62,091 nt of DNA. Origin: Bigelowiella natans CCMP2755 (taxonomy: Eukaryota > Protista > Cercozoa). Where the stretch lies: assembly GCA_000320545.1 (NCBI GenBank), contig ADNK01000947.1:1-62091 (forward strand). The letters run 5' to 3'. Made by a program: the position numbers and the translations under genes. Below the pieces are notes generated by a model, which made no database searches, had not been told where the DNA came from, and worked only from the letters and a program-made list of their open reading frames with translations. The first letter of the stretch is position 1. Every line of letters starts with the position of its first letter. Positions 9,946 through 53,383 of the stretch are shown piece by piece.

Positions 9946-10539
9946 AGAACTCACATCGCCATTGACTCATCGGTTAACATCGCATCGATGTGCGTGCACG
10001 GCAAGACTAAAAGCAAAGGAGTCGGTGGATGCGTAGCATTTCAATTGTAGAGATATCGTATCTCTAGATGTAGCAATAGTGCAACGGGTGATGATGTATA
10101 GATGCGTTGAATAGTTATCACTAAAAGTCTTGCAATCTTGCTGCTTGCGATCTATAAACATTGACCACCAGGTGCACAAAGCGCCGTTCCGTAGTCCGCA
10201 GGGTGCGCGAATGCTAGTTTGTGTGTGCTTATTAAGCGTATTATGTGCATCTAGCTATGCTCTAGACATATAATTAGTGCAGGCATGCATAGATGATGAT
10301 TATTATGATGCTATATCTCATTTGCAATGGCATGCATGTCACATCATGCATGCTAGCATGCTACATGCGACAGCGAGTCAACTTGGTTGTTGGTGCACAC
10401 TTACACAACGTACTAGGCATGACCACAGACATCGGGCACCGCCAGCGCGTGTATAGCTGCATTATAGCATGCAAGTAGGCGGGTCGATGAATCCATGCAC
10501 GATGGATCGGATAACCAGTAATCCAGCTTCATATTATTA

Positions 10540-13500
10540 TTAGAATCTAACGATGAATCTCTCTCCAAAACATGCAACACCGCATCGTTTCGGACAATCA
10601 ACATCCTTTCCGTTGCAGTATCCCTGACAAATATCGTCGCACGTTCTCCCCCCCATTGGCTTCTCATGCTGATGAGCATGCTGCTCCACGATAGAAGTCG
10701 ACGAGACGTGTTGCTTCCTGCTTTGAGTTGGACGCTTCTGTTGTTGTTGCTGCTGCTGCTGCTGCTCATGTTTTGAAGTACCGTCATTAGCATATGCATC
10801 TTCCTTTCTTTTATCACTTTTCTTCTCCCCTTCCCCCTTCTCCTCCTCCTTCTCCTCCCTTTTCTGAGTTGATGCTGAATTGCTGGAGCGACCTTCTTTT
10901 TTTGGTGTTATGGCGGAGCTACTGCTGTTTGTACCAAGACTGCCTTCATCGACAACCACACTCACTAAGGCAGAGTACATTCACATTAAAATAGTAAGAA
11001 GCAGCAAAACAATACATCAGTTAACTAATGCTGTTATGTAAGTCAACGAATTGTTATAATTCTATTATTATATTAGCAGCAGGTTTCGTTAATAATAAGT
11101 CTCATCAATCTTTCGAGCTGTTAGTCTCAGTCCCCCCCCACCACCCATATTTCGTGAGAGTCAATAGCTACCAAGGCCAAGGAGATATTCATAATATTTT
11201 TTCAATAATAATTACCAATTTTGTCAGCTCTTTCATCCTCCTCTCCTCTCTGGACTGGAGAAGCAATACTGTAATTTGACTGATGGTGATGATCCGTATG
11301 AACATCCTCATTAGCTTTCTCATTTGCTCCTCCTTTCTTTCCTTCTTCAGAGTGACTGGCCGATGAAGATGATGATGATGACGATGATGATGATGATGAT
11401 GATGACACATTGAAGCACGAGTGTACTTCTTCGCACTGAGTAAGCCCATCAAATAATGCTCGGTCACTTTGTCCAAGCTACAACCATGTGGGAGCGGGGG
11501 AAATAGGCGCAACGTCAGAGATGGCAATGACGATTTAATGATCATGATGGCAATGTGTGCGACAACTTTTCCTCTTCCTCTTCTTCGTCTTCTTCTTCTT
11601 TTTCTTCTTCCTCCTCCTCATTCCTCGTCACTGATGCAACTACTACACCTACCACCACCACCACCACCACTACTACAAAAAACTACCGAATCGTGTATAT
11701 CGATGCACTGCTGCATGTCTTTGTCAGATTGCAGGCACTGAAAGACCTCGGCACACGCTGATGATGATGATAGTGATGATGATGATGATGATGATGATGA
11801 GTAAATATGAGGAAAAGAGTACGGGAAGCAAAACCATACGTCGTACATTGTAGTATATGCGGTTACACTCTGTTGAAAAGATGGCAGATAAAAACATATG
11901 AGAAAGAAAATGAAGAAACAGAGGGGTTTTGCACTGTATTTTATTCACACGTCTTTTCAAAGAAAGGAAAGCTTAGTAGAAAAGAGAAAATAGCATGGCT
12001 ACTAATGAGCAACATCCACCATCCTCAACAGTAGTAAAATGTCATCAGTGAAGAAAGCAAACTCTCTCTCTCTCTCTCTCTCACACACACACACACACAC
12101 GCACACACATATTAAAAATTCTACAAAAGCAGCGGCAGCAGCAGCCACCTGAGTTGGAAGCACATCTTAGGTAAGTCTTCGGACAACCCTCGAGAATACA
12201 TCTGATGATCATCATTTACCATACTAAGTTAGCAATACTTCGATGTTTCAAACACTAAGGCACTGACTGTTATCAACGAGACGACGATGTTTCTTCAATA
12301 GCAGCAAGCGACTTCCTCCCTCATTACTACTACAACTACTACAACAACAACTACTACAACCACAGATCCCCCCCTTATTATCATTTGCTTTTGCTAATAC
12401 TACTACTCTCTTCTATATGCCACCAGTGCTACTACGTCATTTTCTTCACCTTAAAATGTGATCCTCATACACCTTAGTAGCAGTGCTGCCCCCCTCTTCT
12501 GCCTTCTTCCCCTGATCCCCCTCCCTTACAGATAGAGATGCAGAGGTTTTTGTTGCTATCGTAGGGACAGCAGCTTCAGGTGAAGATGATGAATGCTGCG
12601 GAGCTTTGTGTTGGGATGAAGAGGAGGAGGAGGAGGAAGAAGATGAGGGTGATGATGAAGACAGCGTTGAAGATTCTGCCTCCCCTCTTCCTATTAATTC
12701 TTTACCATCATTCGCAGTAGTTTCACTACTAGAACGGTTGTTCTCATTCCTTTCCCCAACAGTGCTTGCTGCAATAGATGATGACTTAGTTTCACCCTGC
12801 GATGAAGATGATGATGAGGAGGAGGAAGAGGAGGAGGAGGATGATAACGATGTCTTTTTAGCTCCGAAAAAGTCAGCAAGAGAGTTGTCTGAGGCAGCAG
12901 CAGCAGCAGCATCAATATCCACAGAAGGAGTAGAGGACGAACCACCATTGCCACCGCCATCAGCAGCAGCAGCAGCAGCACCAGCAGCAGCCGTCTTATT
13001 ACTACTACTATCATCCTTTTGTTGTCGCCAATAATTCGTAGTATTGTTACGATGATCATGATGTTGTGATGACGAAGAAGACCGAGCTGCTGTAGTAGCA
13101 TTACTTTCTGTGTTGGTTTTAGTAGCTGATGGAACTGCCTTCTTTGCGTGCTCCTCCGTGCTAATCGTGGTAGTAGTCTTTGCCGTCGTCGCCTTCTCTC
13201 TTCTATGATGGTCATCGTCCATCTTTGCCCTACTTGTTTCAAGGACTAATCTAGCAGCTGTTTGTGCAGCACGCCAAACCTGAAAGAGAGAAAGAAAAAA
13301 GAGAAAAAAGAAGAGGAGGCAACCAGACAAACGTAAAGCATATGCTGATTGTAGGGGGAGAGATCGACAGCGAAGTGCTGATAATCCCTCCTACCCCAAC
13401 CTAAAAATTGTTGAATACCAGACAGCACTGTGTAGTGAGCATAAATTTGTTTTTAACACGACAAGTTACGGAATAGCATGCCTTGCAAACACGTAATGCT

Positions 13501-50600: not shown

Positions 50601-52368
50601 GTCGTCGTCATGCGCCTTCTTCGTCACGATGTTGTTCACATTATTCCATTCAAAGCAGCAGTAATTGCCTACTACTACTACTACTTCCACGATGTTGTAA
50701 ATTATTACATTAAAGCATTTGGGTACTACTACTACTACTACTACTACCACTGCTACTACTACTACTACGACTACTACTAGTACTACTTTGCATCTGCTCA
50801 TAAGTGTGTTGCATGAGAAAGAGTAGTAGTAGTAGTAGTAGTTGTTGTAGTAGTAGTTGTAGTAGGAACAGCCATTATAGATAAACTAATGTGTATCTTG
50901 TAGGAGTCATCATCATCATCAGCAGCAGCAGCAGCAAAGGAATAATGGTAAAAGAAGTAGTAGTAGAAGTAGTGAGTTGGTACTGGCCATATCACGTGCA
51001 ACATCGATGATTCCTCCCAACGTTCTTGCTCAAGCTCCTCCAGAGCGTATGAAGATATTAGTAGCAGCTTTGAATGCTGCAGCGCAAAGGAAACAAAGGC
51101 TGCAACAACATCAACCAAGTCATAATCATAATCATCATCATGATTTTGACAACAAATCTTCACCGTATGGAAGTAGCAGCAGCAAGCCAGGTAGTGGATG
51201 TGATGATGATGATGGAGACACAAAGAATATGAGCATAGCATCATCATCATCATCATCATCATCATCATCATCCTTTTGTGCAGGAAAGGAAGCTGTTACA
51301 GTTGTTCAGTCAAACAGAGGCATAAATGGTGAAGATAATATCAATAGAGGGGAAGGAGGCGCTGTGATTCAGCAGCAACAACAACAACAGCAGCAGACTA
51401 CTACTACTAGTAGTAGTAGTAGTAGTAAGAGTAGTAATAGTGTTGCATTAGGAAGGACCAGTAAGGCGTCTAAAGCAAGCGATTTGCTTCAGGTATTATT
51501 ATGCACTATTACTAGCACTGCTGCATGCTGCATGCTGCTACACATTCGTCGTATGAGTGCTTGTATCCAACTACTACTCATACTATCTTCCAACATGTAA
51601 CTATTACTTACTATACTACTAATTACGGCCTACTTAAAGGCGTGAGTTACTACTAATAGCTGTAACTACTACAAACGTATGTTGTTATTATTATTATTAT
51701 TATTATTGTTATTATTATCATTATTATTATTACACAGCCAAACACTTATTACTTTGCAAGTTGAGTTCTCTGACAGCAGCGTTCTCTGTTATCATAGAAA
51801 CTTACTGTCAAAGCAGTCCAACAAGAAGATTTCCTTCAAGCGCAGAAGTAAGTACATACATACAAGGCGCTACACCAAGAGAAGGAAGCGAGGGGAGGGG
51901 GGGGGGTTCAGAAGAGTGTGTGCTTTCGATCGTTTGCTTCATAAAAGCACCTATTGGTATTGTCTTCGCCAAATTTTCAATATCATCAGCTTTCTCGATG
52001 TCTGATTATAGATACGTGTATGTACGTCTCTCTCTCTCTCTCTCTCTCTCTCTCTCTCTCTGTGTGTGTGTGTGTGTGTGTGTGTGTGTGTGTGACTGCA
52101 CAGGTTGAAAGAATTACGAATCCGACTATGTCAAATGAGGGAGGTCATTAATGAGGCAATTGCAAAGGAAGAGGTAAAGAAGATGTAAAAAGAAGAAGAA
52201 GTAGAAGGAAGAAAATTCCGTACATTTCTTAGTGAAACATTTGCTGTTGCTGCATGTTGCTGTTGCTTTCAGTTTTTAGCAGCGCACAAGGCCAAGCAAG
52301 AGCTGTCAAAGTTCATTGATTCATTATATATGACCACGCTGTCAAAGAAAGAGGAGCACACTACCTGA
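47685..52368 (+). CDS. F-box domain protein with extensive low-complexity regions
   Basis: ATG 47685 exon (donor gtgagt) joins ORF 47780 in frame. F-box motif spans an intron: IIREILSCIPTSDLLPLRM|VCKKWN (~48790-49085). Last exon AAHKAKQELSKFIDSLYMTTLSKKEEHTT* (TGA 52366-52368). Confidence 0.72.
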
Positions 52369-53383
52369 ATGAACATTAATTGTGGAAAGCCGAATTCAAT
52401 ATTCTGACATTACTATTTCGGCAACACAATGAAATGTGTGTAGATGCATCCTCGTAGATTGGTATCCAATCATCCCAGCTTCAACTACAGCATGAAGGCA
52501 TAAAATTGCACATATGATGTAGTAGCAGTGTTTACGTGTGCTAGCGCGTAAAAGTCCCAAAATCGTATAATTCGTCTTCATGGTCTGGTGACAAATGAGC
52601 ACAGCAAGCTGCCTCCAGTCAACGCAGACTTGCAGAACTTCATCTGAATAAACACATCGATCAAAAAAGCATTCATGCCAGAGCAACTAGCATCGGCATG
52701 ATTTCGGCAACATGCTAGCATGGACAAGCGTATTTGCCATGTGACATGAGGCTGTCTAGCTGCGATCCCTCGATCATTGTTGCATCGTTTGATGTTTCAT
52801 GCTAGCATGCATTGCATGTCGCATCAGCATAAACAATGATGTGCTACTGTAGTTGCTGCACGAATGCTGTACATTCGAATAAATGCACATTTGATTTGAG
52901 CATTGCGTCGTCTGGCGTTGACATCTAGACATGCAGTGCTAACTGAAAAGAAACCTGCGATTAGTTGTCGACTACATGACACACCACCCACATATACTAG
53001 ACATATCTTGCTAGCTTGTATGTGCCTATAAGAAATCGGTCACTGCCACACATGCACATGGCCACATGCACCAAGCTAACTAGATGCGTGCACAGCACAG
53101 GCAGTCGCAAGTGCGACACAACCATGCTAGTATGTGCATGTGCCATGGTGCATGTCAACGAATAATTCTAGAGCTGTGCTCGACTACGCATTGCTACTCG
53201 ATGGTACGTCTTGCAATAATGGCGGTGAAAAAGAGGAAATTGTTAATTTGTAAAATAAAAAGTCTAAATAGTCCGATTAAGGGCCGAATTCTAAACTGAA
53301 AGGACCAGCAACGCAGATTCACCGTAAACTACAATCATTCCCTTATCTTTTCCCAATATGATTTGATTCACACATTGGTGCCT

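What the first reader, a model, noticed from the sequence alone, without database searches (positions are those of the whole stretch)
9946..53383. A distinctive sequence signature marks the gaps between convergent (tail-to-tail) genes and not divergent ones: candidate termination-zone DNA modification/mutation system
Seen: once the gene models are drawn, the patches of TGCA/GCAC/CATG-rich, CTAG-rich, nearly microsatellite-free DNA all fall downstream of a + gene and, where a model exists, facing a - gene. These are 9946-10539 (~6 CTAG in ~10060-10420), 29660-31130 (~41), 36159-37860 (TpA void), 40071-41080 (~16 in ~40470-41070) and 52369-53383 (~11). The convergent gap 17250-18329 is only weakly affected (TGCA/CATG-rich, no CTAG excess). 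Divergent gaps (6300-6950, 15760-16340, 33000-33530, 61250-61600) show about 0-1 CTAG by eye and normal TA. Established: base J (modified T) marks convergent termination regions in kinetoplastids, dinoflagellates carry 5-hmU, and fungal RIP rewrites repeats by CpA>TpA. Inference: here a modification targeted to convergent-transcription zones (dsRNA/siRNA- or termination-guided) leaves a mutational scar, or the palindrome CTAG is a strand-symmetric terminator/binding site serving both genes. I do not recognise this pattern from any described system. The convergent status of the 36-37.8 kb gap rests on a weak gene model.
Basis: partly seen in the sequence, partly recalled or inferred. Interest (0 to 1): 0.88.

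Follow-up and report, generated by a model that had tools for sequence, protein, structure and literature searches.

The report
CTAG-rich spacers between convergent Bigelowiella genes
In the alga Bigelowiella natans, the DNA between genes that point at each other has its own purine-pyrimidine-alternating make-up, looks partly rewritten by the species' recently reported TpA-to-CpA/TpG hypermutation, and carries far more copies of CTAG, the one word that escapes this mutation, than escape alone can explain.

Summary
The counts are right: 41, 16, 11 and 6 CTAG in four spacers, and a TpA void at 36.2-37.9 kb.

The window is Bigelowiella natans CCMP2755 (JGI model Bigna1 72193 maps exactly). A 2026 preprint showed TpA->TpG/CpA hypermutation of integrated viral DNA in this species. 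That accounts for the void, which lies in a tandem (+/+) gap and is a separate, already known kind of thing.

Five gaps are convergent.
- **Shared make-up:** they show raised purine/pyrimidine alternation (0.54-0.63 against 0.40-0.52 in six divergent gaps) and excess CpA+TpG.
- **Editing signature:** four of the five have lost about half of their free TpA and hold 10-28 CTAG/kb, against 2/kb elsewhere.
- **Position:** same-species transcripts place the cores mostly beyond the mRNA 3' ends.
- **Not repeats:** the patches do not align with each other.
- **CTAG is spared:** all five TpA in the void core are CTAG. A simulation shows that sparing alone gives about 1.5 CTAG/kb, so the arrays need selection or another source.

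First-stage notes report the same pattern on other pieces of this genome. This window cannot separate "convergent" from "any 3' end". I rate it a new variant of a known kind, of moderate to high interest.

The parts
9946..10539 (.). Convergent spacer p10. The core is about 10000-10539: 6 CTAG, alternation 0.634, CpA+TpG o/e 1.50, free TpA o/e 0.93.
   Evidence: Flanks are ORF-based: + stop at 9943-9945, - stop at 10540-10542.
17243..18332 (.). Convergent spacer p17. It has the highest R/Y alternation in the window (core 17600-18200, 0.665) but is TpA-rich and has 0 CTAG. I read it as the unedited form of the class.
   Evidence: + gene Bigna1 72193 ends at 17242. The WD40 exon 18333-18593 is on the - strand.
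29660..31130 (.). Convergent spacer p30. The core is 29850-31020: 41 CTAG (47% of all YYRR tetramers), free TpA o/e 0.54, CpA+TpG o/e 1.49, alternation 0.598.
   Evidence: The ankyrin gene (-) stops at 31131-31133. The + ORF stops at 29657-29659.
36159..37860 (.). TpA void. There is no non-CTAG TpA in 36349-37739; the five TpA there are all CTAG. GC is 51% and alternation is average. A separate thing: a fully hypermutated block in a tandem (+/+) gap, or a predicted orphan gene.
   Evidence: Internal duplications. No Pfam match.
40071..41080 (.). Convergent spacer p40. 40071-40630 is transcribed 3'UTR with 3 CTAG. 40631-41080 has 13 CTAG (29/kb), free TpA o/e 0.51, CpA+TpG o/e 1.54.
52369..53383 (.). 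Convergent spacer p52. The 3'UTR 52369-52665 has 1 CTAG. The post-poly(A) core 52666-53170 has 9 CTAG, alternation 0.636 and CpA+TpG o/e 1.77. 53171-53383 is ordinary (0 CTAG, alternation 0.476).
52647..52668 (+). AATAAA (52647-52652) and the likely cleavage/poly(A) site (about 52662-52668) of the + gene left of p52.
   Evidence: Transcript L005 is 100% identical up to 52668 and then carries two non-templated A.
48247..52668 (+). Expressed + strand gene (10 mapped exons) that forms the left flank of p52.
   Evidence: L005 from JGI 3300017184, 100% identity
38088..40630 (+). Expressed orphan + strand gene (P0003, 288 aa) with introns at 39400-39475 and 38430-38574. Five assemblies end at 40563-40630. 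It makes the 36-38 kb gap tandem.
31131..32537 (-). Ankyrin-repeat gene with GT-AG introns of 60-110 nt. Right flank of p30.
   Evidence: tblastn of P0002, 65% identity
53384..53536 (-). Last exon of a C2H2 zinc-finger gene, including its stop codon. Right flank of p52.
   Evidence: Pfam zf-H2C2_2 7.6e-11 and zf-C2H2 2.5e-7
16345..17242 (+). JGI gene model Bigna1 72193 (EukProt EP00466_Bigelowiella_natans_P011371). It identifies the organism and is the left flank of p17.

Best explanation
Between convergent B. natans genes, the DNA that lies mostly beyond the poly(A) sites is a distinct class of spacer. It is rich in alternating purine-pyrimidine steps, poor in homopurine runs and poor in pure microsatellites.

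In four of the five spacers here, roughly half of the TpA steps have been turned into CpA/TpG. I infer that this was done by the TpA-directed hypermutation already shown for silent viral insertions in this species, whether it works by A deamination or by T modification. I further infer that it acts at low, chronic intensity on these spacers because they are not part of mature transcripts.

That conversion turns TATA-like alternating DNA into TGCA/CATG/GCAC-rich DNA. CTAG is exempt from the process. CTAG has also accumulated to 10-36 per kb, which exemption alone cannot produce. So it is either selected (an editing-proof TpA, or a bound or modified site) or made by an unknown process.

The TpA void at 36.2-37.9 kb is the full-strength form of the same mutation on a different kind of sequence, and it is not a convergent spacer.

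Shown: the compositions, the positions relative to genes and mRNA ends, the organism, and the sparing of CTAG. Inferred: that the known process acts on the spacers, why it acts there, and why CTAG is enriched.
For: - **Organism.** JGI model Bigna1 72193 maps exactly on the window. Same-species transcripts are 99.6-100% identical.
- **Known process.** In the mutation-accumulation lines, 230 of 231 mutations in the viral regions are A:T>G:C, nearly all at TpA. Eleven of the 71 mutations elsewhere are also at TpA, two of them on scaffolds with no viral ORF identified.
- **Cores.** Free TpA is 12-24% of all Y-R steps, against 28% window-wide and 38% in p17. CpA+TpG is 58-69%.
- **Shared profile.** With CTAG excluded, the tetramer profiles of the four cores correlate 0.55-0.73 with each other and 0.14-0.39 with the rest of the window. 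The unedited p17 core correlates 0.54 with the pooled cores. After in-silico conversion of 50-70% of its TpA this rises to 0.70-0.71. Edited bulk DNA reaches only 0.44 and edited divergent DNA 0.37.
- **Alternation.** Transitions cannot create it. It is highest in four convergent gaps and separates convergent from divergent gaps.
- **Position.** The cores sit beyond the mRNA ends.
- **CTAG sparing.** In the void core 5 of 5 TpA are CTAG, and 3 of the 7 survivors at its edges are TTAG or CTAA half-sites. In the mutation-accumulation table the TA-G context makes up only 20 of 206 events by my hand tally.
- **Not repeats.** The patches do not align with each other.
Against: - Total TpA in the cores (53-87 per kb) is about the window average, so the depletion appears only after CTAG and microsatellites are set aside.
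- The CpA/TpG-rich make-up could be intrinsic. It could reflect GU-rich downstream elements on both strands, or the bias of de novo insertions toward ...ACA strings seen in the preprint's table.
- No mutation or polymorphism data bear on the cores themselves.
- p17 is unedited for no known reason.
- The first 3 CTAG of p40 and 1 of p52 lie inside 3'UTRs, and in p40 the array runs to within 20 nt of the minus gene's stop codon. 'Untranscribed' is therefore only approximate.
- Only the plus-side mRNA ends are mapped, and the poly(A) evidence rests on two non-templated A plus an AATAAA.
- The CTAG excess is not explained by the model.
- The sample is five convergent gaps and one tandem gap.
Confidence: 0.5

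Rival explanations
1. The cores are selected, strand-symmetric cis-elements of bidirectional termination zones. Alternating UG/UA-type elements would serve 3'-end processing on both strands. CTAG arrays would bind a factor (a roadblock, insulator or cohesin/topoisomerase site) whose occupancy also shields CTAG from the mutator. On this reading TpA loss is secondary or absent.
For: - The CTAG density cannot arise from sparing alone.
- The flanks prefer [G/T]CTAG[C/A] symmetrically.
- Shared 12-mers between spacers number 24, against 7-9 expected under order 3-5 Markov models. One example is a palindromic 12-mer centred on CTAG seen three times, and none of the listed ones occurs elsewhere in the window.
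- The arrays begin close to the mRNA ends.
- The 3'UTR of a related species also carries alternating TA/CA/TG sequence.
- Bidirectional termination zones are described in yeast (title and abstract of 10.1101/2022.11.02.514956).
Against: - There is no palindromy beyond the four bases at individual sites.
- No spacing rule is seen among the CTAG positions.
- p17 has no CTAG at all, yet it also separates convergent genes.
- The arrays span 0.5-1.1 kb, far more than a processing signal needs.
- No binding factor is known.
Confidence: 0.22
2. The cores are relics of mobile or viral DNA. Such DNA survives best in convergent spacers, where it disrupts no promoter, and it is then hypermutated as foreign DNA like the known targets.
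For: - The known targets of the process are viral and transposon-derived.
- The void block has internal duplications and a 29-nt tandem repeat.
- One 21-nt match links p30 and p40.
Against: - The spacers do not align with each other even in a purine/pyrimidine alphabet.
- There are no terminal repeats or long hairpins, no Pfam hits and no tandem structure.
- The shared alternating make-up also holds for the unedited p17.
- First-stage notes say every tail-to-tail spacer in other windows has it (unverified).
Confidence: 0.1
3. There is no targeted system. Convergent spacers are simply the only unconstrained, untranscribed DNA in a compact genome, and they show the raw neutral mutation spectrum of B. 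natans: background TpA events, an insertion bias toward ACA-type strings, and slippage.
For: - In the mutation-accumulation lines the intergenic single-nucleotide rate is 3 times the genic rate and the indel rate 9 times.
- Most de novo insertions are alternating strings ending in ACA.
- Eleven of 71 background mutations are at TpA.
Against: - Introns are also weakly constrained, yet here they are full of pure microsatellites and lack the signature.
- CTAG enrichment is not predicted.
- Most background TpA events lie in or near virus-like ORFs.
Confidence: 0.15

Closest known systems
Regional TpA->TpG/CpA hypermutation of integrated viral DNA in Bigelowiella natans (Mettrop et al., bioRxiv 10.64898/2026.01.13.699255)
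   Same: Same organism and same dinucleotide change: TpA is lost and CpA+TpG gained. The 36.2-37.9 kb void passes the preprint's own thresholds (Rho TpA <=0.43, Rho CpA+TpG >=1.52). A TpA-poor CDS on the same scaffold, seven gene models away, is in their Table S8.
   Different: The preprint does not mention CTAG, gene orientation, UTRs or palindromes. It ties the process to foreign DNA. Here the weaker form sits in host spacers with no sign of foreign origin, CTAG is spared, and CTAG is strongly enriched.
Bidirectional terminators and termination zones between convergent yeast genes, with the palindromic alternating UAUAUA efficiency element (from my own knowledge, plus the abstract of 10.1101/2022.11.02.514956)
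   Same: They lie between convergent genes at and beyond the poly(A) sites, and use strand-symmetric, purine-pyrimidine-alternating sequence.
   Different: In yeast the elements are short, AT-rich and TpA-rich. Here the TpA is half replaced, the tracts are 0.5-1.1 kb long, and CTAG arrays are present. Function is untested here.
Base J at convergent strand-switch regions of kinetoplastids; 5-hydroxymethyluracil in dinoflagellates (from my own knowledge)
   Same: A thymine-centred mark at places where converging transcription ends. T modification at TpA would give the same T>C signature on both strands.
   Different: No evidence of any modified base here. B. natans genes are monocistronic and closely alternate in orientation. 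J itself leaves no known mutational scar.
Repeat-induced point mutation (RIP) in fungi
   Same: A dinucleotide-specific, regionally confined hypermutation that leaves a compositional scar.
   Different: The direction is opposite (RIP makes TpA from CpA). RIP needs duplicated sequence, and the spacers here are not repeats of each other.

Membership tests
B. natans TpA hypermutated region (Mettrop et al. 2026) | The organism is Bigelowiella natans | tested here: met
   Bigna1 72193 / EP00466_Bigelowiella_natans_P011371 maps exon by exon on 16345-17242.
B. natans TpA hypermutated region (Mettrop et al. 2026) | TpA o/e <=0.43 together with CpA+TpG o/e >=1.52 | tested here: inconclusive
   The void meets it (0.12 and 1.56). 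The spacers reach 1.44-1.54 as whole gaps and up to 1.77 in the p52 core for CpA+TpG. Their TpA is 0.74-1.07 in total and 0.54-0.93 without CTAG and microsatellites.
B. natans TpA hypermutated region (Mettrop et al. 2026) | The target is of viral, transposon or other foreign origin | tested here: not met
   No Pfam match in the patch ORFs, no repeats or terminal structures, and no homologues of the neighbouring orphan gene in 1.8 billion representatives. Absence of a match does not prove host origin.
B. natans TpA hypermutated region (Mettrop et al. 2026) | De novo A:T>G:C mutations at TpA seen in mutation-accumulation lines | not testable with these tools
   Positions are published, but the scaffold coordinates of this window are unknown. 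The one scaffold_18 event is A>C in a GAA context.
Multicopy transposable-element family | Copies align with each other or with a consensus | tested here: not met
   Within the window, blastn finds only microsatellite matches plus one 21-nt match. A scan in the R/Y alphabet is no better than shuffles. The rest of the genome could not be searched.
Fungal RIP | CpA->TpA changes in duplicated DNA | tested here: not met
   TpA is depleted and CpA/TpG enriched, which is the opposite direction. The spacers are single-copy in the window.
Base J / 5hmU termination mark | Modified thymine and JBP/TET-type enzymes | not testable with these tools
   The sequence carries no information on base modification, and the proteome was not available for search.
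Bidirectional termination zone | Lies between the poly(A) sites of convergent genes | tested here: inconclusive
   The plus-side mRNA ends are at about 52665 (AATAAA plus two non-templated A) and at 40563-40630. Most CTAG lie beyond them. The minus-side ends are not mapped, because both metagenome DNA scans returned nothing.
Bidirectional termination zone | Stops read-through transcription in both directions | not testable with these tools
   This needs nascent-RNA or reporter data.

The most novel reading that the evidence does not exclude
B. natans chronically mutates TpA in silent DNA. Its convergent-gene termination zones have evolved arrays of the one TpA word that is immune, CTAG. Immunity would come from a dedicated protein binding CTAG or from methylation of its adenine. 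The arrays would act as strand-symmetric terminator or boundary elements. This would be a mutator and an immune motif evolving together.
Probability: 0.2. Interest if true: 0.85.

Novelty: new variant of a known kind. Interest (0 to 1): 0.6.

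Why it matters
The preprint presents the TpA mutator as a defence aimed at foreign DNA. If the same process also works on host DNA between convergent genes, its targeting is more likely to read a chromatin or transcription state than foreignness. That changes what kind of system it is, and it can be tested with data that already exist: the mutation-accumulation lines, B. natans ChIP-seq and RNA-seq.

The exemption of CTAG gives a handle on the enzyme's specificity, or on a protecting modification or protein. CTAG arrays that sparing cannot explain point to an undescribed cis-element or an undescribed mutational source at eukaryotic gene ends.

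Tried and rejected
- **Rfam and tRNA scans:** nothing found.
- **Codon-usage bootstraps to call gene strand:** too noisy, because triplet repeats score on both strands. I used homology, Pfam and transcripts instead.
- **Patches as one repeat family:** rejected within the window.
- **CTAG as a pure mutational sink:** rejected. The simulation gives 1.5/kb and 2.4% of YYRR tetramers, against 10-36/kb and 21-47% observed.
- **CWG-methylation-driven C>T feeding CTAG:** CAG/CTG is not depleted in the cores (0.97x).
- **Tandem (CTAG)n expansion:** it accounts for only 8 of the 41 sites in p30.
- **Longer palindromes centred on CTAG:** none found.
- **CTAG clusters at 0.6-1.2 kb:** these are junctions of (ACT)n and (AGT)n microsatellites and are not the same thing.
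- **The flagged window at 5.4-5.8 kb:** an imperfect (ATG)n tract.
- **Transcripts over the p30 core and over the minus gene right of p40:** both metagenome DNA scans came back empty. Exact-protein look-ups of two window ORFs and of two stored protein ids (P0001, P0005) were also empty.
- **Exact look-up of ORFs inside the void,** to identify JGI model 72186: not in the collection.
- **Strain SNPs in the p40 region:** too few to read.

Full report

The window has 41% GC and 190 CTAG. TpA observed/expected is 0.12 in 36159-37860. In 36349-37739 the only five TpA are all inside CTAG.

Pooled, the patches differ from the rest of the window as follows:
- CTAG is enriched 6.8-fold, GCGC 5-fold, GCAC 4.5-fold, CATG 3.3-fold and TGCA 3-fold.
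- Homopurine words are depleted.

Against a dinucleotide model of each gap, the CTAG excess is 41 vs 6.4 (P 7e-20), 16 vs 3.6, 11 vs 2.0 and 6 vs 1.7. An unsupervised 400-nt scan flags the same places as the only long runs that combine low free TpA, high CpA+TpG and many CTAG. Other CTAG clusters, such as 0.6-1.2 kb, are junctions of (ACT)n and (AGT)n microsatellites.

**2. Which organism, and what is already known?**

One ORF query returned a protein named jgi/Bigna1/72193, also listed as EukProt EP00466_Bigelowiella_natans. It maps exon by exon on 16345-17242. MMETSP-type transcript contigs are 99.6-100% identical to the window. The window is therefore nuclear DNA of Bigelowiella natans CCMP2755, scaffold 18.

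First-stage notes on other pieces of this genome spoke of a 'reverse RIP'. That led me to a 2026 preprint (10.64898/2026.01.13.699255). It reports the following:
- In mutation-accumulation lines, two integrated viral regions mutate about 1000 times faster than the rest of the genome.
- 230 of 231 changes there are A:T>G:C, nearly all at TpA.
- There are 124 TpA-poor clusters genome-wide.
- An ADAT2-like deaminase is proposed as the cause.

The preprint does not mention CTAG, palindromes, UTRs or gene orientation.

**3. Gene orientation.**

Minus-strand flanks:
- The ankyrin gene stops at 31131-31133. This rests on a 65%-identical homologue that also fixes four GT-AG introns.
- A C2H2 zinc-finger last exon lies at 53387-53536.
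- A WD40 exon lies at 18333-18593.

Plus-strand flanks:
- Model 72193 ends at 17242.
- Transcript L005 maps as ten exons from 48247 to 52668. It ends in two non-templated A, 10-16 nt after an AATAAA at 52647.
- Five independent assemblies of the orphan gene P0003 run from 38088 or 38308 to 40563-40630.

The remaining flanks rest on ORFs only. So p10, p17, p30, p40 and p52 are convergent. The 36.2-38.1 kb gap lies between two + strand genes, so it is tandem. It may instead hold the TpA-poor predicted CDS 72186, which the preprint lists seven models away on the same scaffold. I could not verify this.

**4. The signature has three layers.**

*(a) Purine/pyrimidine alternation.* Transitions cannot create or erase it, so it is independent of the mutator. 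With microsatellites masked, the fraction of alternating steps has mean 0.50 and sd 0.047 over 500-nt windows. The four highest peaks (0.636-0.678) are p17, p10, p52 and p30. Convergent gaps score 0.543-0.634 and divergent gaps 0.403-0.520 (p 0.004).

*(b) A shift from TpA to CpA/TpG.* Free TpA is 12-24% of Y-R steps in the four CTAG cores. It is 28% window-wide and 38% in the p17 core. CpA+TpG is 58-69%.

*(c) CTAG.* It makes up 38% of all YYRR tetramers in the cores, against 5% elsewhere, and 47% in p30. Its flanks are [G/T]CTAG[C/A].

With CTAG left out, the tetramer profiles of the four cores correlate 0.55-0.73 with each other and 0.14-0.39 with the rest of the window. The unedited p17 core correlates 0.54 with the pooled cores. 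After in-silico conversion of 50-70% of its TpA this rises to 0.70-0.71. Editing bulk DNA reaches only 0.44, and editing divergent DNA only 0.37. The CTAG cores therefore look like p17-type DNA plus partial TpA conversion plus CTAG.

The void is different. Its alternation is average and its homopurine words are at normal frequency, so it is ordinary sequence with the TpA removed.

**5. Where the cores sit.**

In p52:
- The 297-nt 3'UTR has 1 CTAG.
- The next 505 nt have 9 CTAG, alternation 0.636 and CpA+TpG o/e 1.77.
- The last 213 nt before the minus gene's stop codon are ordinary.

In p40, the transcribed 560 nt have 3 CTAG and the remaining 450 nt have 13. The cores are thus mostly outside the mature plus-strand mRNAs. 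The minus-side mRNA ends could not be mapped.

**6. Not a repeat family.**

- blastn finds only microsatellite matches between the patches, plus one 21-nt match between p30 and p40.
- A scan in the R/Y alphabet, which tolerates any number of transitions, is no better than shuffled sequence.
- There are no tandem arrays, terminal repeats or hairpins, and no Pfam hits.
- Short words do recur: 24 shared 12-mers against 7-9 expected under order 3-5 Markov models.

**7. CTAG.**

Sparing is clear. In the void every other TpA is gone and CTAG remains at 3.6/kb. Three of the seven TpA at the void's edges are TTAG or CTAA half-sites. In the preprint's table, my hand tally by edited strand gives TAT 67, TAA 67, TAC 52 and TAG 20. 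This is a manual count from the printed table. Two first-stage notes report the same sparing rule on other pieces of the genome.

If A followed by G is a poor substrate, CTAG is the only word that is protected on both strands.

Sparing does not explain the excess, however. I ran a simulation with the preprint's background mutation bias, fast TpA editing and immune CTAG. It settles at about 1.5 CTAG/kb and 2.4% of YYRR tetramers, with CTAG at about 0.8 times the level of CCAG/CTGG. Observed in p30 are 41 CTAG against 5 CCAG and 2 CTGG.

Other sources I checked:
- CAG/CTG is not depleted in the cores.
- Tandem (CTAG)n covers only 8 of the 41 sites in p30.
- The sites are not centres of longer palindromes.

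Something else must supply or keep CTAG. Candidates are selection for TpA steps that can survive only in this context, a protein or methyl group on CTAG, or an unknown mutational source.

**8. Reading.**

My best account has about 0.5 confidence. Convergent spacers beyond the poly(A) sites are a distinct alternating class of DNA. The known TpA mutator works on most of them at low intensity, perhaps because they are outside mature transcripts or are heterochromatic. B. natans has a single H3K9me3+H3K27me3 repressive state (10.1101/2025.03.17.643675). CTAG is immune and is additionally enriched for an unknown reason.

The rivals are selected bidirectional terminator elements, relic mobile DNA, and plain neutral drift of untranscribed DNA. 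The window holds only one tandem gap, so 'convergent' and 'any 3' end' cannot be separated. Three first-stage notes report the same islands in tail-to-tail spacers of other windows. They are unverified leads.

**9. Verdict.**

The void is an instance of an already published phenomenon. Three points are not in the literature I could search:
- the link to convergent spacers;
- the alternation layer;
- the sparing of CTAG together with an excess that sparing cannot explain.

I rate the finding a new variant of a known kind, with interest about 0.6.

Noticed in passing
window 30945-30965 (-) and 40934-40954 (+): A 21-nt stretch, identical at 20 of 21 positions and containing GCCAATCTAACAAT, occurs once in p30 and once in p40 and nowhere else in the window. 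A chance match between the patches is unlikely, about 5e-4 by my estimate.
   Followed up: partly
window 10349, 52711, 52798: The palindromic 12-mer CATGCTAGCATG occurs three times, in two different spacers, and nowhere else in the window. ACATCTAGACAT likewise occurs in p40 (twice) and in p52.
   Followed up: partly
window 36655-36705 vs 37024-37065; 37788-37850: The TpA-void block contains an internal duplication of about 45 nt at 369-nt spacing. It also has a perfect 29-nt tandem direct repeat at its right edge, whose two TTAG are among the few surviving TpA.
   Followed up: partly
preprint 10.64898/2026.01.13.699255, Table S2 (indels): Most of the 13 de novo insertions in the mutation-accumulation lines are short, mostly alternating strings ending in ACA (for example TACACA, TACGCGCAACA, GCATTACA). 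Several sit next to a G>A change at TGC. Such an insertion bias could itself feed CA-rich alternating DNA into unconstrained spacers.
   Followed up: no
preprint Table S2 (scaffold_10 list): By my hand tally, edits in the TA-G context are strongly asymmetric between strands of the reference: 3 written as A>G in TAG against 17 written as T>C in CTA. The other three contexts are balanced.
   Followed up: no
window 48247-52668 (+), locus L005: One spliced transcript carries two separate ORFs, of 134+ aa and 212 aa, joined by splicing across 49950-50366. It is either a long 5' leader with an upstream ORF or two genes read as one transcript.
   Followed up: no
window 31226-31321 (-): The last exon of the ankyrin gene contains a 96-nt GT-AG intron that is in frame and free of stop codons, so the ORF reads straight through it.
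   Followed up: partly
whole window: About 10% of the window is perfect microsatellite of 12 nt or more. Many of these are triplet repeats inside coding ORFs (poly-Q, -H, -S, -E). By contrast, 32.8-41.5 kb is almost free of microsatellites.
   Followed up: partly
window 38488, 39555, 39617, 40376, 40393: Three of the five transcript assemblies differ from the window at these five positions (one of the three does not cover 38488), and the other two are identical to the window. At least two B. natans strains are therefore represented. One of the differences is TpA vs TpG.
   Followed up: partly
window 18333-19741 (-): A WD40 gene whose exon sequence resembles the Polycomb subunit EED/ESC (my reading of the motif ...[19 protein letters not shown]). 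This fits the H3K27me3 reported for this species.
   Followed up: no
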